Both the position numbers and the translations under genes were made by a program. Shown one piece after another: positions 1,468 through 62,246 of a DNA stretch of 64,000 nt. This DNA is from Antechinus flavipes. Its lineage: Eukaryota. The stretch covers positions 190,092,001-190,156,000 of the forward strand of contig NC_067401.1 in NCBI RefSeq assembly GCF_016432865.1, given 5' to 3'. Each line of letters starts with the position of its first letter. Within the stretch, counting starts at the first letter, position 1. The notes under the pieces are model-generated. The model saw nothing but the letters and a program-made list of their open reading frames with translations. It searched no databases and had not been told where the DNA came from.

Positions 1468-3000
1468 CTTTTTTTTTTTTTTTTTTTGGTTTGTTTTTTT
1501 AAATAGCTTTTTATTTACAAGGTATATGCATGGGTAATTTTACAGCATTGACAATTGCCAAACCTTTTGTTCCAATTTTTCCCCTCCTTTCTCCCACCCC
1601 CTCCCCCAGATGGCAGGGTGACCAATAGATGTTAAATATATTAAAGTATAAATTAGATACACAATAAGTATACATGACCAAACCGTTATTTTGCTGTACA
1701 AAAAGAATCAGACTCTGAAATATTGTACAATTAGCCTGTGAAGGAAATCCAAAATGCAGGCAGACAAAAATATAGGGATTGGGAATTCAGTGTAATGGTT
1801 CTTAGTCATCTCCCAGAGTTCTTTCATTGGGTGTAGCTGGTTCAGTTCATTACTGCTCCATTGGAACTGATTTGGTTCATCTCATTGCTGAAGATGGCCA
1901 CGTCCATCAGAATTGATCATATAGTATTGTTGTTGAAGCATATAATGATCTCCTGGCCCTGCTTGTTTCACTCAGCATCAGTTCGTGTAAGTCTCTCCAG
2001 GCCTTTCTGAAATCCTCCTGCTGGTCATTTCTTACCGAACAATAATGTTCCATAACATTCATATACCACAATTTATTCAGCCATTCTCCAATTGATGGGC
2101 ATCCACTCAGTATCCAGTTTCTGGCCACTACCACAAACATTTTGGCACATACAGGTCCCTTTCCCTTCTTTAAGATCTCTTTGGGGTATAAGCCCAGTAG
2201 AAACACTCCTGGATCAAAGGGTATGCACAGTTTGATAGCTTTTTGGGCATAGTTCCAAATTGTTCTCTAGAGTGGTTGGATGTATTCACAATTCCACCAA
2301 CAATGTAGCAGTGTCCCTGTTTTCCCACATCCCTTCCAACATTCCGCATTATCTTTCCCTGTCACTCTAGCCAATCTGACAGGTGTGTAGTGGTATCTCA
2401 GAGTTGTCTTAATTTGCATTTCTCTGATTAATGACTTGGAGCATCTTTTCCTGTGGCTAGAAATAGTTTCAATTTCTTCGTCTTTGAGAATTGTCTGTTC
2501 ATATCCTTTGGCCATTTATCAATTGGAGAATGGTTTGATTTCTTTAGAGTCAATTTTCTATATATTTTGGAAATGAGTCCTTTATCAGAACCTTTGACTT
2601 AAAAATATTTTCATAGTTTATTGCTTCCCTTCTAATCTTGTCTGCATTAGTTTTGTTTGTACAAAAACTTTTCAATTTGATATAATCAAAATTTTCTATT
2701 TTGTGATCAGTAATGATCTCTAGTTCTTTGGTCATAAATTCCTTCCTCTTCCACAGGTCTGAGAGGTAAACTATCCTGTGTTCCTCTAATTTATTTTATA
2801 ATCTCATTTTGTCTAGGTCATGAACCCATTTTGACCTTATCTTGGTGTATAGTGTTAAGTATGGGTCGATGCCTAGTTTCCTGCCATACTAAGTTTCCAA
2901 TTTTCCCAGCAATTTTTGTCAAACAGTAAAGTTCTTATCCCAAAAGCTGGGGTCTCTGGGTTTGTCAAACACTAGATTGCTATAGTTATTGACTGTTTTC
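1468..3000 (-). mobile_element. 5'-truncated LINE-1 (ORF2 C-terminus, 3' UTR, poly(A))
   Basis: Poly-T at about 1469-1500; ORF-track fragments REMQIKTTLRYHYTPVRLA and WKLSGCPSIGEWLNKLWYM-type are L1 ORF2 C-terminal; possible TSD agactttcaac (1457-1467) / agactttgaac (3001-3011). Confidence 0.92.
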
Positions 3001-3117
3001 AGACTTTGAACATTAAACAGTACCCCTCCCTCTCTAAGGAATTAGGTTATATGATTGCTTCTCTCTCACAGGAACCCATTCCTCATTACACAAAGAAATA
3101 AGTTTGTGCCAAAATAT

Positions 3118-3123
3118 TTTATT
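3118..3123 (-). terminator. VARS1: VARS1 polyadenylation signal AATAAA
   Basis: tttatt on plus, 64 nt beyond the stop codon. Confidence 0.75.
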
Positions 3124-3186
3124 GCTGCAGCACCACCTCCCACCCAATAATGGGAGGTCAGCGTGCTGGGGAGCTGTTTCCAGATC

Positions 3187-21864
<18,678 letters not shown>

Positions 21865-41433: not shown

Positions 41434-43362
41434 CTAATCCACTTCCTCAATAGTGGGGCCAGAGGGGGGTCCTTTGGGAGGAACATATCCACAAGTGCCC
41501 CCCATGCCTCCCTCACATCCTTGATAGAGCTTAGTGATGATAGGATTACACACCTGCTCTAATTCTTTCCTCTTATGCTCATACTCTTCCTTCTCAGCTA
41601 GCTGATTGGACTCCAGCCAGGAAAGGACTTCTTGGCATTTATCTAACACTTTTTTCTTGTCATCTTCACTGATCTTTCCCTTTAAGCCTTCCTCACTCAC
41701 TGCATTCTTCATGTTGAAGGCATAAGATTCCAGAGCATTTTTAGCAGCAACTTTCTCCCTCTGGGCCTCATCTTCTGATTTATATTTTTCTGCATCACGC
41801 ACCATTCGCTCAATTTCTTCCTTGCTCAGGCGACCTTTATCATTAGTGATGGTGATCTTGTTGGCTTTGCCTGTGCTCTTATCCATAGCTGTGACATTCA
41901 GAATTCCATTGGCATCTATATCAAAGGTTACCTCAATCTGGGGGACACCACGGGGAGCAGGGGGAATGCCACTCAGGTCAAAACGACCCAGAAGGTTGTT
42001 GTCCTTGGTCATGGCCCGTTCTCCCTCATATACCTGGATCAGTACACCCGGCTGGTTGTCAGAATAGGTGGTAAAGATCTGGGTCTGTTTGGTGGGGATG
42101 GTGGAGTTGCGTTTGATCAGTGCTGTCATCACACCTCCTGCTGTCTCCAGCCCCAGGGAAAGGGGAGCCACATCCAACAGCAACAGGTCCTGCACTTTCT
42201 CTGATTTATCACCCATCAGAATGGCTGCCTGCACTGCTGCTCCATAGGCTACAGCCTCATCAGGGTTGATGCTCTTGTTCAGGTCTCTGCCATTGAAGAA
42301 ATCCTGCAGTAGTTTCTGTACTTTGGGGATTCGGGTGGAGCCACCCACAAGGACAACGTCATTGATTTTGGCTTTGTCCATCTTGGCATCTCGCAGGGCT
42401 TTCTCTACAGGCTCCAGGGTACCCCGGAACAGATCTGAGCACAGCTCTTCAAACCTTGCCCTGGTGACAGAAGTGTAAAAGTCAATGCCTTCAAATAAGG
42501 AGTCAATTTCAAGATTGGCTTGGGTGCTGGAAGACAGGGTTCTCTTAGCCCTTTCACAGGCTGTTCGAAGTCTTCTCACAGCCCGCTTGTTCTGGCTAAT
42601 ATCTTTCTTATGTTTTCTCTTGAATTCCTCAACAAAGTGATTTACTAGTCGATTATCAAAGTCCTCCCCACCCAGGTGGGTGTCTCCTGCAGTGGCTTTC
42701 ACCTCAAAAATCCCATCATCAATGGTAAGAATGGAGACATCAAAAGTGCCCCCACCCAGATCAAAGATCAGTACATGTCGCTCTCCCTGACTAGCTTTAT
42801 CTAGTCCATAAGCAATGGCAGCTGCTGTAGGTTCATTGATGATTCTCAGCACATTCAGGCCAGCAATCACTCCAGCATCCTTGGTGGCCTGGCGTTGAGA
42901 GTCATTGAAATAGGCTGGGACAGTGATGACTGCATTGGTGACTGCATGACCCAAGTAGGCCTCCGCAGTCTCCTTCATTTTGGTCAACACCATGGAGGAG
43001 ATCTCCTCAGGATAGAAGGCCTTGTTTTCACCTTTGTAGGACACTTGAACTTTAGGCTTACCTCCATCATTTATCACCTGGAAGGGCCAGTGCTTCATAT
43101 CGGATTGTACCACGGAATCTCCAAATTTGCGACCAATCAGCCTTTTGGCATCAAAGACTGTGTTCTGAGGATTCATGGCCACCTGGTTTTTGGCTGCATC
43201 TCCAATGAGTCTCTCTGTGTCTGTGAAGGCCACATAGCTGGGGGTGGTTCGGTTGCCCTGGTCATTGGCAATGATCTCCACCTTGCCATGCTGGAACACT
43301 CCCACGCAGGAGTAGGTGGTGCCCAGATCGATGCCGATGGCGGTACCTTTGGTAGATGACAT
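41434..43362 (-). CDS. HSPA1L: Hsp70 family member 1-like, 642 aa, uninterrupted ORF
   Basis: IDLGTTYS ... EEVD. L-type tail (AVSEEG, ITKLYQG, GYVP). Position after LSM2 and head-to-head with the inducible gene matches HSPA1L synteny. Confidence 0.93.
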
Positions 43363-43386
43363 GACTCTCCCACAAGCTCCGGGAAG

Positions 43387-44010
43387 GCTAAAGGATATGT
43401 GTCCCTGTCAAGATGACTATTGAGTAGGGTTCGCACAGGGTGAGGATTGGGAGTTTTCTGATAACACTTGGGGAGAGGTCTGGCCTCCCTTGAAAGCTTG
43501 TACACACTGCACCACTCCCACCAGTTTTCTCCAGAATTAATGTCCCCTTTGGCAGGTTCAGTTCAATTTTCCTTTGGGTTAGAGGAAAAGGCAAAAGTGG
43601 GGCCGAGGCTCTATTGGGGGGAGTCACCTCAGGAGGTCGTTACCTCAGGAGGGTTTTTTCCCCCGCCTCTCATGAACATCCAGCCCCCTTCCTAAACTCT
43701 CCCCTCTCCCCTCCTCGTTTTAACTAATTATGGCCCTAAGATGCTCCCGAAGAGTCTTTCTCTCCGATACCCTGTCACAGCAACGTTCGCAACGGTCTGA
43801 ACTGCAGGTCCCACCTCTTTGGGACAGGGCCAACCAATCACGATCCCCATAAGCCCCACCCTCCCGCCCATCTCTTCTTCCCTGCGCCGCCCAAGGCCCC
43901 GCCTCCCTCCCAGGGCGCTGGTTCAGGTCCTTCTCCCGAACTTTAGGGAACTTTCTCCGTCTTAGGCAGTCGCCCCTCCCCCCACTGTTTAGGGTCCAAT
44001 CAGAATCTCC
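43387..44010 (-). promoter_or_regulatory. HSPA1L: HSPA1L promoter with candidate non-coding exon and short intron
   Basis: CCAAT at 43834 and 43997, GC boxes at 43860-43905; candidate donor ctgag|gtaacg at 43644 and acceptors at 43404 or 43387. Confidence 0.45.
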
Positions 44011-44475
44011 CGTAGCCTCTGCCCCACCCCACCCCCACCCTGTTCTGACTTCAGTCTAGAATTTCATGCACCTTTCAAACTCTCCCCTGGCATTTTGCTC
44101 TTTGCCCACGTACTACGAAGAGGTCATTAACGTAAACAAAGCCCCAGTCACTCCAGTAGGCCAAATGGCGCAACAAACCCACAACCAATTTTACTTTATA
44201 CTCATTCCTAAAAAGGAGAGCGATCCAATGAGAGAGACAGAGATAGAGAGAGACAGGGAGAGAGAAAAAAAGACATGGAGGGAGGGAGGCAGTGGCAGAG
44301 AATGTGTGTCTGTGTAGAGAGGAAGAGTGATAGAGAGACAGAGAGACTGAGTGTGACAAAGTTGTCATGGTAACAAAGTGCAGTGAGCGGCACCAAAATC
44401 GGCTGTGCACACCCTGCTTAAGGGTCCTCTTCTCTATTTTCTTCCGCCTACAAACTCGTACTTCTCAGGAACCCC

Positions 44476-44495
44476 AGAAATGTCCCGAAAGTTCT
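44476..44495 (+). promoter_or_regulatory. distal heat shock element
   Basis: In-register pentamers aGAAa tGTCc cGAAa gTTCt, followed by a GC box (44501) and inverted CCAAT (44521). Confidence 0.75.
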
Positions 44496-44577
44496 GAAGA
44501 GGGGCGGGATGCCCGCCGTGATTGGTTGGAGTTGCTTTTGGGTAGGACCTGGACCCCTAAAAGCCTCACTCATGGCG

Positions 44578-44602
44578 CGAAATCACTGGAAAATTCCTGA
44601 GC
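44578..44602 (+). promoter_or_regulatory. proximal heat shock element
   Basis: cGAAa tCACt gGAAa aTTCc tGAGc, resembling the mammalian HSPA1 proximal HSE; GC box at 44632, ATTGG at 44651, AT-rich box at 44690-44700. Confidence 0.8.
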
Positions 44603-44959
44603 AAGATGGGGGAGAGAAAGAGAAGGGAACACCGCCCCAGGAACGCTGTGATTGGCTGACACATGCGGAAAAGAATAGGTCCTTGGGAGAATAAATAAAT
44701 ACTGAGCATTGCAGCTGCTTCTGACAACCTGCGAATTGGAGTAACTGCGCCACTGAAACTTCCGAAATTTCTCGGAACATAGAGGCTCCGAAACCTTCGC
44801 GAGTCAGCCATAATTGAAGCCTTCTGGAAAATCCCGAGTAAAGGCGTATTTTTCCCAAGGCGCTTGCGCTCCCGCAAGAGGAACCTGTTCCGTGAGGATT
44901 GTACTTGCAGTTTCCTGGACTGAGCTTCCAGAATCAGAATTCTGGAGACATTTTCCAAG

Positions 44960-46891
44960 ATGTCATCTGCCAAAGGTACCGCCATCGGCATCGATCTGGG
45001 CACCACCTACTCCTGCGTGGGAGTGTTCCAGCATGGCAAGGTGGAGATCATTGCCAATGACCAGGGCAACCGAACCACCCCCAGCTATGTGGCCTTCACA
45101 GACACAGAGAGACTCATTGGAGATGCAGCCAAAAACCAGGTGGCCATGAATCCTCAGAACACAGTCTTTGATGCCAAAAGGCTGATTGGTCGCAAATTTG
45201 GAGATTCCGTGGTACAATCCGATATGAAGCACTGGCCCTTCCAGGTGATAAATGATGGAGGTAAGCCTAAAGTTCAAGTGTCCTACAAAGGTGAAAACAA
45301 GGCCTTCTATCCTGAGGAGATCTCCTCCATGGTGTTGACCAAAATGAAGGAGACTGCGGAGGCCTACTTGGGTCATGCAGTCACCAATGCAGTCATCACT
45401 GTCCCAGCCTATTTCAATGACTCTCAACGCCAGGCCACCAAGGATGCTGGAGTGATTGCTGGCCTGAATGTGCTGAGAATCATCAATGAACCTACAGCAG
45501 CTGCCATTGCTTATGGACTAGATAAAGCTAGTCAGGGAGAGCGACATGTACTGATCTTTGATCTGGGTGGGGGCACTTTTGATGTCTCCATTCTTACCAT
45601 TGATGATGGGATTTTTGAGGTGAAAGCCACTGCAGGAGACACCCACCTGGGTGGGGAGGACTTTGATAATCGACTAGTAAATCACTTTGTTGAGGAATTC
45701 AAGAGAAAACATAAGAAAGATATTAGCCAGAACAAGCGGGCTGTGAGAAGACTTCGAACAGCCTGTGAAAGGGCTAAGAGAACCCTGTCTTCCAGCACCC
45801 AAGCCAATCTTGAAATTGACTCCTTATTTGAAGGCATTGACTTTTACACTTCTGTCACCAGGGCAAGGTTTGAAGAGCTGTGCTCAGATCTGTTCCGGGG
45901 TACCCTGGAGCCTGTAGAGAAAGCCCTGCGAGATGCCAAGATGGACAAAGCCAAAATCAATGACGTTGTCCTTGTGGGTGGCTCCACCCGAATCCCCAAA
46001 GTACAGAAACTACTGCAGGATTTCTTCAATGGCAGAGACCTGAACAAGAGCATCAACCCTGATGAGGCTGTAGCCTATGGAGCAGCAGTGCAGGCAGCCA
46101 TTCTGATGGGTGATAAATCAGAGAAAGTGCAGGACCTGTTGCTGTTGGATGTGGCTCCCCTTTCCCTGGGGCTGGAGACAGCAGGAGGTGTGATGACAGC
46201 ACTGATCAAACGCAACTCCACCATCCCCACCAAACAGACCCAGATCTTTACCACCTATTCTGACAACCAGCCGGGTGTACTGATCCAGGTATATGAGGGA
46301 GAACGGGCCATGACCAAGGACAACAACCTTCTGGGTCGTTTTGACCTGAGTGGCATTCCCCCTGCCCCCCGTGGTGTCCCCCAGATTGAGGTAACCTTTG
46401 ATATAGATGCCAATGGAATTCTGAATGTCACAGCTATGGATAAGAGCACAGGCAAAGCCAACAAGATCACCATCACTAATGATAAAGGTCGCCTGAGCAA
46501 GGAAGAAATTGAGCGAATGGTGCGTGATGCAGAAAAATATAAATCAGAAGATGAGGCCCAGAGGGAGAAAGTTGCTGCTAAAAATGCTCTGGAATCTTAT
46601 GCCTTCAACATGAAAAGTGCAGTGGAAGATGAAGGTCTGAAAGGAAAGATTAGTGAGGAAGACAAGAGAAAAGTGCTGGAGAAATGCCAAGAGGCTATCT
46701 CTTGGCTTGATGCCAACCAGCTGGCTGAAAAAGAAGAGTTTGAGCATAAGAGAAAGGAATTAGAGCAGGTGTGTAACCCTATTATTACTGGTCTTTACCA
46801 GGGAGCTGGTGGTCCTCCTGGGGAAAGTTATGGGGCTCAGGCCCAGCATTCAAGCTCTGGAACAGGCCCCACTATTGAAGAGGTGGATTAA
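44960..46891 (+). CDS. HSPA1A: stress-inducible Hsp70 (HSPA1A/B type), 643 aa, intronless
   Basis: A-type tail ([35 protein letters not shown]); HSE promoter; HSPA1A position. A versus B naming rests on position only. Confidence 0.9.
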
Positions 46892-61218: not shown

Positions 61219-61284
61219 TGGCATGATGACCCTAGAGTGGATCTGAGTATCTCCTTGATGCTACTACCGCAGCGCTCTGACTCT
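61219..61284 (+). ncRNA. SNORD48: C/D box snoRNA U48
   Basis: C box ATGATGA at 61223-61229; guide ACCGCAGCGCT directly before D box CTGA at 61277-61280, as recalled for human U48. Confidence 0.88.
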
Positions 61285-62176: not shown

Positions 62177-62246
62177 TGGGAATGATGAGTTTTCAGACTA
62201 GAGTCTCTGACACATGCATTGGAGACAAGAAAACCACTCTGACCCA
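62177..62246 (+). ncRNA. SNORD52: C/D box snoRNA U52
   Basis: Stem tggg/ccca; C box ATGATGA at 62182-62188; guide CAGACTAGAGTC complementary to 28S GACUCUAGUCUG; D' at 62207; D at 62239-62242. Confidence 0.9.

What the first reader, a model, noticed from the sequence alone, without database searches (positions are those of the whole stretch)
41708..46614. HSPA1L and HSPA1A form a near-perfect 1.65-kb palindrome confined to coding sequence
Seen: 1653/1655 identity, synonymous sites included, starting exactly at both ATGs and ending abruptly at codon 552; UTRs and the last ~90 codons are clearly divergent. Established: in eutherians conversion homogenises HSPA1A with HSPA1B, while HSPA1L stays distinct. 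Inference: here ongoing arm-to-arm gene conversion links the testis-type and stress-inducible genes, giving one shared ATPase and substrate-binding core with two alternative lids and tails. I cannot check whether this is already reported for marsupials.
Basis: partly seen in the sequence, partly recalled or inferred. Interest (0 to 1): 0.9.

Follow-up and report, generated by a model that had tools for sequence, protein, structure and literature searches.

The report
HSPA1L–HSPA1A converting palindrome in marsupials
In the yellow-footed antechinus, and in every other marsupial I could check, two back-to-back heat-shock protein 70 genes keep copying the first 1,655 bases of their coding sequence onto each other while their last 90 codons stay distinct, which published work says does not happen for this gene pair in mammals.

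Summary
Window 41708-43362 (−) and 44960-46614 (+) are coding nt 1-1655 of two head-to-head HSP70 genes. They differ at 2 of 1655 sites. The 5' flanks are unrelated up to both ATGs, and the last ~90 codons are 71% identical.

The window is Antechinus flavipes MHC class III. The order LSM2–HSPA1L–HSPA1A–SNORD48/52 is conserved and there is no HSPA1B.

The interpretation of ongoing arm-to-arm gene conversion is supported.
- **Other marsupials:** the same block, ending within a few bases of nt 1655/1656, is homogenised in Sminthopsis (0 differences), koala (17) and Dromiciops (68). The tails group by orthologue.
- **Concerted change:** 74 of the 75 core differences between Antechinus and Sminthopsis are present in both arms of a species. 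This also rules out an assembly artefact.
- **Direction:** the shared core is HSPA1L-type in dasyurids and HSPA1A-type in koala.
- **GC bias:** the Sminthopsis lineage shows 37 W→S against 2 S→W changes.

The boundary lies at the end of lid helix B, so only the distal lid bundle and the tail are gene-specific.

I found no report of this. Hess et al. 2018 state that HSPA1L evolves independently in all mammals. This is a new instance of a well-known process, of moderate interest. One practical consequence is that published devil "HSPA1L" qPCR primers match both genes.

The parts
41434..43362 (-). HSPA1L orthologue, intact intronless CDS (642 aa plus stop)
   Evidence: ORF. Pfam HSP70 at 3e-265. 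The tail groups with marsupial HSPA1L at 96/96. LSM2 lies downstream in the colinear loci of other marsupials.
41708..43362 (-). Left arm: HSPA1L coding nt 1-1655 (codons 1-552), the converted block
   Evidence: 2 of 1655 differences from the right arm. dS is 0.0026.
41434..41707 (-). HSPA1L-specific end: third base of codon 552 to the stop (distal lid helices and Gly/Cys-rich tail ending in EEVD)
   Evidence: 70.9% identical to the HSPA1A end, but 93-99% identical to the HSPA1L ends of koala and Sminthopsis.
43363..44959 (.). 1597-nt spacer holding both promoters and 5'UTRs. It is not repeated.
   Evidence: No arm-to-arm similarity. It is colinear and in the same orientation relative to the L and A tails in Sminthopsis, koala and Dromiciops.
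43937..43956 (.). HSE-like array of four pentamers (one imperfect) on the HSPA1L side of the spacer
   Evidence: Conserved in all four marsupials. Function was not tested.
44476..44499 (+). Distal heat-shock element of the HSPA1A promoter. It is followed by a GC box, CCAAT boxes, a proximal HSE (44588-44602) and a TATA-like box (44690-44701).
   Evidence: Read. Conserved in four marsupials. These are consensus matches only.
44960..46891 (+). HSPA1A-type gene (the single inducible-type HSPA1 of marsupials), intact intronless CDS (643 aa plus stop)
   Evidence: ORF. Pfam HSP70 at 1e-264. The tail groups with marsupial HSPA1A.
44960..46614 (+). Right arm: HSPA1A coding nt 1-1655, the converted block, carrying HSPA1L-type diagnostic sites
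   Evidence: 11 of 12 robust diagnostic nucleotide sites are L-type. Residues M63, H139, K189, Q192, H196, L239 and N283 are L-type.
46615..46891 (+). HSPA1A-specific end (distal lid helices and Gly/Ser-rich tail ending in EEVD)
   Evidence: 92-97% identical to the HSPA1A ends of koala, Dromiciops and Sminthopsis, and 71% identical to the HSPA1L end.

Best explanation
The two arms are coding nt 1-1655 of the HSPA1L and HSPA1A orthologues of Antechinus flavipes, which lie head to head 1.6 kb apart in the MHC class III region. They are kept almost identical by frequent, non-crossover, intrachromosomal gene conversion between the inverted copies. Conversion tracts can start anywhere in the shared block. 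They cannot spread past the ATGs, because the 5'UTRs are unrelated. They also cannot spread past nt 1655, where homology falls to about 71% with 9 mismatches in the next 25 nt. Purifying selection keeps the two C-terminal ends distinct. The process is old and recurrent in marsupials, with the same limits within a few bases in four species of three orders. In the dasyurid ancestor the HSPA1L-type core overwrote HSPA1A, and in the koala lineage the HSPA1A-type core overwrote HSPA1L. As a result, the two proteins in Antechinus differ at Thr/Ala4 and otherwise only in the distal lid bundle and the tail (29 of about 90 aligned residues). The genes also keep different promoters and UTRs. Shown here: sequence identity, boundaries, tree discordance, co-substitution in both arms, direction of overwriting, and GC bias in one lineage. 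Inferred: the molecular route (non-crossover repair or SDSA), the role of the homology barrier versus selection in fixing the boundary, and the expression patterns of the two genes.
For: Core differences between paralogues are 2 (Antechinus), 0 (Sminthopsis), 17 (koala) and 68 (Dromiciops) of 1655. Tail differences are 68-79 of 271. Paralogue dS in the core is 0.0026, 0.034 and 0.13 for Antechinus, koala and Dromiciops, with no synonymous difference in Sminthopsis. Tail dS is 1.1-2.0 and orthologue dS is 0.18-0.44. Among three species, the core has 116 species-pattern sites and 0 orthologue-pattern sites, and the tail has 1 and 46. An AU test rejects an HSPA1L clade in the core (p = 9e-57) and rejects the window pair as a clade in the tail (p = 3e-65). 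Of the 75 Antechinus-Sminthopsis core differences, 74 are shared by both arms within a species. The two differences in the window are derived singletons, one in each arm. The first tail differences fall at nt 1656/1658 in all four species. Flanks are unrelated in all four species. The locus is colinear and the spacer orientation is unchanged. The Sminthopsis lineage has 37 W→S against 2 S→W core substitutions, and core pS is 0.19 against 0.07-0.09 in the tails (p = 0.006). Published opossum values, 92.09% nt identity and pS 0.16 between HspA1 and HspA1L against 81% and 0.48 in human, fit the same pattern.
Against: There are no reads or population data, so polymorphisms shared between the arms were not examined, and continuous conversion cannot be formally separated from one very recent event per lineage. 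The Antechinus assembly was made from PacBio CLR reads and polished with Pilon using 100-bp reads, which could erase a few true arm differences. The Antechinus lineage shows no GC bias (7 W→S against 12 S→W). Trichosurus and Dromiciops keep about 20 diagnostic amino-acid differences in the core, so homogenisation is incomplete in some lineages. Testis-specific expression of marsupial HSPA1L is assumed from eutherians.
Confidence: 0.93

Rival explanations
1. Assembly or polishing artefact: the two arms really differ by several percent, and long-read correction or short-read polishing made them look alike.
For: The assembly used canu-corrected PacBio CLR reads, wtdbg2 and Pilon with 100-bp reads. 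Multi-mapped short reads can homogenise near-identical repeats.
Against: The same block with the same limits is homogenised in three other species from independent assemblies. The 74 species-specific substitutions present in both arms cannot be created by polishing. Arms that differ by several percent would not be multi-mapped. The arms lie 1.6 kb apart between unique flanks, so single long reads span them.
Confidence: 0.02
2. Rare episodic events: one large conversion happened by chance shortly before the present in each lineage, and there is no steady, frequent process.
For: Sequence from one individual per species cannot distinguish rate from recency. Dromiciops and Trichosurus keep islands of difference.
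Against: Three lineages (Antechinus 2 differences, Sminthopsis 0, koala 3 outside one island) all sit within about 1 My of full identity. That is improbable if events were rare. Dromiciops shows many separate identical runs between islands, which is typical of repeated short tracts.
Confidence: 0.06
3. Selection on the nucleotide sequence itself (codon usage or mRNA structure) keeps the cores identical without any exchange.
For: HSP70 coding sequences are highly constrained, and dN is very low.
Against: Synonymous sites differ freely between species (pS 0.19 between the two dasyurids, dS 0.35 to koala), yet they are identical between arms within a species. 73-74 of the 75 co-substitutions are synonymous.
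Confidence: 0.01
4. A recent inverted duplication of one gene, followed by rapid divergence or replacement of the 3' end.
For: Near-identity of two adjacent inverted copies is what a young duplication looks like.
Against: Both tails, both 3' flanks and the spacer are orthologous and colinear across three marsupial orders. Tail dS between paralogues is saturated at 1.1-2.0.
Confidence: 0.01

Closest known systems
Concerted evolution of HSPA1A and HSPA1B in eutherian mammals (Kudla et al. 2004, cited from memory and; Hess et al. 2018, PMC5865164)
   Same: It is the same MHC class III cluster and involves the same inducible gene. Conversion is confined to coding sequence with divergent UTRs. Paralogues cluster within species. 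A GC-biased signature is seen here in the Sminthopsis lineage.
   Different: The partner here is HSPA1L, which Hess et al. say evolves independently in all species. The copies are inverted and 1.6 kb apart, not tandem and about 12 kb apart. Only codons 1-552 are exchanged, so the two products stay different at the C-terminus. Marsupials have no HSPA1B.
Drosophila melanogaster Hsp70Aa/Hsp70Ab inverted pair (Bettencourt & Feder 2002, cited; details from memory)
   Same: It is a head-to-head inverted pair of HSP70 genes homogenised by gene conversion.
   Different: The Drosophila copies are functionally equivalent inducible genes that are converted over their whole length including regulatory DNA. 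Here two anciently diverged paralogues with different promoters share only part of the coding sequence.
Arm-to-arm gene conversion in primate Y-chromosome palindromes (Rozen et al. 2003, from memory; PMC8600007 appeared only as a title)
   Same: Inverted arms around a unique spacer are kept above 99.9% identical by intrachromosomal non-crossover conversion. The rough conversion rate estimated with the same formula is about 1e-5 per site per year.
   Different: The arms here are 1.65 kb rather than 9 kb to 1.45 Mb. They are autosomal and confined to an exon. The arm ends are set by gene structure (the ATG and a point within the lid), not by the limits of a duplication.

Membership tests
HSPA1L / HSPA1A orthologue pair of the mammalian MHC class III region | Both products are full-length cytosolic HSP70s ending in EEVD | tested here: met
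   Pfam HSP70 over residues 8-614, E = 3e-265 and 1e-264. Both translations end in EEVD.
HSPA1L / HSPA1A orthologue pair of the mammalian MHC class III region | Synteny: LSM2 next to HSPA1L, HSPA1L and HSPA1A head to head, and the SNORD48/SNORD52 host gene beyond HSPA1A | tested here: met
   SNORD48 lies at 61220-61282 and SNORD52 at 62178-62245. The loci of Dromiciops, Sminthopsis, Trichosurus and Monodelphis carry an LSM-domain gene beyond the 642-aa gene, and two of them were aligned colinear to the window. The guinea pig control shows HSPA1L-LSM2-VARS.
HSPA1L / HSPA1A orthologue pair of the mammalian MHC class III region | Each gene groups with its eutherian namesake | tested here: inconclusive
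   In the tail tree, marsupial HSPA1L forms a clade at 96/96 and joins guinea pig HSPA1L at only 76/73. The HSPA1A side scores 82/88. In the core the signal has been erased by conversion. In unconverted Dromiciops, diagnostic residues M63, H139, K189, Q192, H196 and N283 (L) and L63, Y139, R189, K192, N196 and S283 (A) are shared with guinea pig.
HSPA1L / HSPA1A orthologue pair of the mammalian MHC class III region | HSPA1A is heat-inducible through HSEs, and HSPA1L is testis-enriched and not inducible | not testable with these tools
   HSE, CCAAT, GC-box and TATA matches are conserved upstream of HSPA1A. An HSE-like array is also conserved on the HSPA1L side. No expression data were available.
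Concerted evolution by interparalogue gene conversion | Paralogues within a species are more alike than orthologues between species, synonymous sites included | tested here: met
   Core dS is 0.0026 (window) against 0.35-0.44 to orthologues. Sminthopsis has 0 of 1657 differences.
Concerted evolution by interparalogue gene conversion | Tree discordance between the converted and unconverted parts of the same genes | tested here: met
   AU tests give p = 9e-57 (core) and 3e-65 (tail). Site patterns are 116/0 in the core against 1/46 in the tail.
Concerted evolution by interparalogue gene conversion | Substitutions since a speciation are found in both copies | tested here: met
   74 of the 75 Antechinus-Sminthopsis core differences.
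Concerted evolution by interparalogue gene conversion | Polymorphisms shared by the two copies within a population | not testable with these tools
   There is one haploid assembly per species and no read or population data.
Concerted evolution by interparalogue gene conversion | GC-biased substitution in the converted tract | tested here: inconclusive
   The Sminthopsis lineage shows 37 W→S against 2 S→W, and core GC3 of 0.61 against 0.47 in the tail. The Antechinus lineage shows 7 against 12.
Large genomic palindromes of the sex-chromosome type | Long arms (at least several kb) that include non-coding DNA, with arm ends set by the duplication | tested here: not met
   The arms are 1655 nt, lie wholly inside the coding sequence, and end at the ATG and at codon 552.
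Large genomic palindromes of the sex-chromosome type | Spacer inversions through crossover between the arms | tested here: not met
   Spacer orientation relative to the L and A tails is the same in four species. Inversion polymorphism within a species was not testable.

The most novel reading that the evidence does not exclude
In marsupials the ATPase domain, the substrate-binding β-domain and the proximal lid of HSPA1L and HSPA1A form one freely exchangeable module. Its type (L or A) was fixed in opposite directions in different orders. Paralogue identity therefore resides only in the promoters, UTRs and last 90 codons. Conversion with HSPA1L would be the ancestral therian state, and eutherians largely left it once the HSPA1B duplicate offered HSPA1A a closer partner. 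This would make marsupials a natural domain-swap experiment on what distinguishes the testis-type HSP70 from the inducible one.
Probability: 0.3. Interest if true: 0.65.

Novelty: new member of a known kind. Interest (0 to 1): 0.55.

Why it matters
1. It corrects a published generalisation. Hess et al. 2018 state that HSPA1L and HSPA1A/B evolve independently in all mammals, yet their own opossum numbers (pS 0.16, 92% nt identity) already hinted otherwise.

2. It locates the lasting protein difference between the two paralogues. That difference is the distal lid bundle and the C-terminal tail, because nature has swapped the rest in both directions without loss of either gene.

3. It has practical consequences. 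In marsupials, qPCR primers, short RNA-seq reads, peptides and antibodies against the first 552 residues cannot tell the two genes apart. The surprising heat-inducible 'HSPA1L' reported in Tasmanian devil cells used primers that match both arms here.

4. Orthology-based selection scans that use these genes in marsupials will be misled by the converted block.

5. The strong W→S bias and doubled synonymous rate in the Sminthopsis lineage give a clean small test case for GC-biased conversion.

Tried and rejected
- **Third copy:** a third HSP70 copy (HSPA1B) in the window as a possible donor. None was found.
orientation is the same in four species, so there is no fixed inversion. Polymorphism is untested.
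- **L-tail protein search:** this was meant to find marsupial orthologues. It was uninformative because all marsupial HSPA1 proteins sit in one 90% cluster. The cluster listing solved this.
- **DNA for other species:** DNA for Trichosurus, Monodelphis and tammar was not delivered because the files were too large, so only protein or published values were used. Tasmanian devil sequences could not be obtained.
- **Guinea pig clade in the core tree:** reading it as evidence of eutherian conversion was rejected. In an unrooted tree it is merely the complement of marsupial monophyly. The patchy pS profile is the relevant evidence instead.
- **Structure model:** the AlphaFold model of the whole protein was poor (mean pLDDT 54). 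Only the lid helices (pLDDT 70-89) were used, to place codon 552.
- **Kudla et al. 2004:** the paper is not held in the library.
Full report
**1. The observation**

The repeat finder reports one inverted pair, 41518-43362 and 44960-46804. Two intact ORFs lie head to head: 41434-43362 on the minus strand (642 aa) and 44960-46891 on the plus strand (643 aa). Both are full-length HSP70s (Pfam PF00012, E about 1e-265).

Compared without gaps from the two ATGs, the coding sequences differ at only two of the first 1655 nt. One difference is at nt 10 (Thr4 versus Ala4) and the other at nt 1407 (synonymous). From nt 1656 to the end there are 79 differences in 271 compared sites.

The DNA upstream of the two ATGs is unrelated up to the start codons (0 of 10 and 1 of 20 bases identical). 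The 3' flanks are unrelated too. The window holds no third HSP70 copy and no N.

**2. What and where it is**

The window is identical to part of CM028220.1 of assembly GCA_016432865.2. Two papers give that assembly as Antechinus flavipes.

Rfam finds SNORD48 (61220-61282) and SNORD52 (62178-62245) downstream of the plus-strand gene. In the colinear loci of other marsupials, an LSM-domain gene lies beyond the 642-aa gene. In guinea pig the order is HSPA1L-LSM2-VARS. This is the MHC class III HSP70 cluster.

The 642-aa gene has the Cys/Gly-rich HSPA1L-type end and the 643-aa gene has the Gly/Ser-rich HSPA1A-type end. Marsupials have one HSPA1A/B-type gene plus HSPA1L (Hess et al. 2018). That agrees with the absence of HSPA1B here.

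Upstream of HSPA1A, the spacer carries two HSE matches, a GC box, two CCAAT boxes and a TATA-like box. All are conserved in four marsupials.

**3. Comparison with other marsupials**

Exact-protein look-ups delivered the whole locus of three further marsupials:
- Dromiciops gliroides (L001)
- koala (L002)
- Sminthopsis crassicaudata (L005)

Guinea pig (L004) served as a eutherian control. The species of these assemblies were checked.

| Species | Core differences (nt 1-1655) | Tail differences (of 271) |
|---|---|---|
| Antechinus | 2 | 79 |
| Sminthopsis | 0 (identical to nt 1657) | 78 |
| Koala | 17 (14 in one island, nt 848-925) | 72 |
| Dromiciops | 68 (clustered in islands) | 68 |
| Guinea pig | 244 | not listed here |

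In all four marsupials the first tail differences fall at nt 1656 or 1658. The 5' and 3' flanks of the paralogues are unrelated in all four.

Synonymous divergence tells the same story:

| Comparison | dS |
|---|---|
| Paralogues, core, Antechinus | 0.0026 |
| Paralogues, core, koala | 0.034 |
| Paralogues, core, Dromiciops | 0.13 |
| Paralogues, tails | 1.1-2.0 |
| Orthologues between orders | 0.18-0.44 |

The published opossum values fit the same picture. They are 92.09% nt identity and pS 0.16 between HspA1 and HspA1L, against 81% and 0.48 in human. The authors did not comment on them.

**4. Tests of conversion**

- **Site patterns (three species):** the core has 116 sites where both copies of each species agree but species differ, and none where the L genes differ from the A genes. 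The tail has 1 and 46.
- **Run-length test:** a Sawyer-type permutation test gives p ≤ 1e-4 for Antechinus and koala and 2e-4 for Dromiciops.
- **Core trees:** maximum-likelihood trees of the core pair the copies by species (Antechinus 100/98, koala 85/100, Sminthopsis identical). An AU test rejects an HSPA1L clade at p = 9e-57.
- **Tail trees:** the tail tree recovers a marsupial HSPA1L clade (96/96) with the species topology inside it. It rejects the Antechinus pair as a clade at p = 3e-65.

The decisive result comes from the two dasyurids. Their cores differ at 75 sites, and at 74 of these both arms of a species carry the same base. Without exchange after the split, the arms of each species should differ at tens of sites. 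The observed counts are 2 and 0.

The two differences in the window are derived singletons, one in each arm. They are new mutations that arose after the last complete homogenisation.

Using the Antechinus-koala synonymous divergence and a split of 55-65 My (the date is from memory), the last homogenisation is about 0.4-0.5 My old, with a Poisson range of 0.01-2.6 My. With the formula used for Y palindromes, this corresponds to a conversion rate of very roughly 1e-5 per site per year. That figure is an order-of-magnitude inference only.

**5. Direction and mosaic**

Dromiciops and Trichosurus keep about 20 diagnostic amino-acid differences in the core. Several of them are shared with guinea pig HSPA1L and HSPA1A:

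| Type | Diagnostic residues |
|---|---|
| L-type | M63, H139, K189, Q192, H196, N283 |
| A-type | L63, Y139, R189, K192, N196, S283 |

I defined 12 robust diagnostic nucleotide sites as those where Dromiciops L matches guinea pig L and differs from Dromiciops A, which matches guinea pig A.
- Both genes of Antechinus and Sminthopsis carry the L state at 11 of the 12 sites.
- Both genes of koala carry the A state at 8 of the 12. Both carry the L state at nt 586, one site matches neither type, and at the two sites inside the island only HSPA1L keeps the L state.

So the inducible-type gene of dasyurids encodes an HSPA1L-type ATPase and β-domain. The koala HSPA1L encodes an HSPA1A-type one. The overwriting in dasyurids predates the Antechinus-Sminthopsis split, because both species share the same mosaic.

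**6. Mechanism**

The arms are inverted, 1.6 kb apart, and surrounded by unique DNA. The spacer is colinear and in the same orientation relative to the L and A ends in all four species. The exchanges that became fixed were therefore non-crossover conversions, since a crossover would flip the spacer.

The 5' limit is the ATG because the UTRs share no homology. The 3' limit coincides with an abrupt loss of homology, with 9 mismatches in the 25 nt after nt 1655 and 71-75% identity beyond. Each tail is conserved among orthologues (dN 0.009-0.048 against 0.17-0.21 between paralogues). I therefore infer that a homology barrier and purifying selection on the two ends together hold the boundary in place.

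Between the two dasyurids, synonymous divergence in the core (pS 0.19) is about twice that of the tails (0.07-0.09, p = 0.006). It also exceeds the non-coding divergence around the genes (7-12%). Polarised changes in the Sminthopsis lineage are 37 W→S against 2 S→W. Core GC3 rises to 0.61 while tail GC3 stays at 0.47. This is the signature of GC-biased conversion. The Antechinus lineage shows no such bias (7 against 12).

**7. Position in the protein**

An AlphaFold model built on a shallow alignment is poor overall (mean pLDDT 54), but it is confident in the lid (pLDDT 70-89 for residues 530-613). It places helices at 514-555, 566-585 and 591-614. Codon 552 therefore lies three residues before the end of the long αA/αB helix.

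The shared module comprises the ATPase domain, linker, β-sandwich and the part of the lid that covers the substrate. The gene-specific part is the distal helical bundle and the disordered tail before EEVD. 'Two alternative lids' is thus only partly right.

**8. Artefact**

The Antechinus assembly used canu-corrected PacBio CLR reads, wtdbg2 and Pilon polishing with 100-bp reads. That could hide a few real arm differences.

It cannot explain three things:
- the same block in three other species from independent assemblies,
- the shared boundary,
- the 74 co-substitutions.

**9. Known or new**

Only 11 papers in the searchable library contain both 'HSPA1L' and 'gene conversion', and none describes this. 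Hess et al. 2018 conclude that HSPA1L shows interspecies clustering and evolves independently of HSPA1A/B in all species. Subscription papers such as Kudla et al. 2004 could not be read, so a prior mention cannot be excluded.

The process itself is textbook for HSP70 genes. Known examples are eutherian HSPA1A/B and Drosophila Hsp70Aa/Ab. I therefore rate this as a new member of a known kind. The notable twists are the different partner, a limit conserved within a few bases inside the gene, and opposite directions of overwriting in different orders.

**10. A practical consequence**

The 'HSPA1L' qPCR primers used on Tasmanian devil cells (S1 Table of PMC5922574) match both arms of the window equally, with 1 and 2 mismatches, at coding nt 1075-1178. 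That stretch is identical between paralogues in all four marsupials with DNA here.

The authors' unexpected heat induction of HSPA1L may therefore be HSPA1A signal. Alternatively it may be real, because an HSE-like four-pentamer array is conserved on the HSPA1L side of the spacer. Devil sequence itself was not available to me.

Noticed in passing
window 43937-43956: An HSE-like array of four alternating GAA/TTC pentamers (one imperfect) lies about 575 nt from the HSPA1L ATG, inside the best-conserved block of the spacer. It is present in Antechinus, Sminthopsis, koala and Dromiciops. Marsupial HSPA1L may therefore be heat-responsive, unlike what is stated for eutherian HSPA1L.
   Followed up: partly
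window 42185-42288 and 46034-46137: Published Tasmanian devil 'HSPA1L' qPCR primers (PMC5922574, S1 Table) match both arms equally. The assay probably cannot separate HSPA1L from HSPA1A. The amplicon would be 104 bp here, whereas the table says 80.
   Followed up: partly
L004 (guinea pig) 1672-3597 and 10001-11929: Guinea pig HSPA1L versus its HSPA1A-type neighbour has pS of only 0.14 in coding nt 601-750 (and 0.28 in nt 1-150). Guinea pig-Dromiciops orthologue pS at nt 601-750 is 0.84-0.92. This points to a local L/A conversion patch in a eutherian, contrary to the view that HSPA1L is untouched there.
   Followed up: partly
L005 (Sminthopsis) 4763-6420 and 8001-9657, compared with window arms: The converting core evolves about twice as fast at synonymous sites as the unconverted tails and the flanking DNA. 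The bias is extreme in the Sminthopsis lineage (37 W→S against 2 S→W) and absent in Antechinus.
   Followed up: yes
window 61220-61282 and 62178-62245 (+): SNORD48 and SNORD52 score above Rfam gathering thresholds, which marks the snoRNA host gene that follows the HSP70 cluster in mammals.
   Followed up: partly
window 43363-43420: The roughly 57 nt next to the HSPA1L ATG are conserved across marsupials and contain a pyrimidine-rich stretch ending in TTTAG shortly before the ATG. This looks like the acceptor of a 5'UTR intron, as in eutherian HSPA1L (that comparison is from memory).
   Followed up: no
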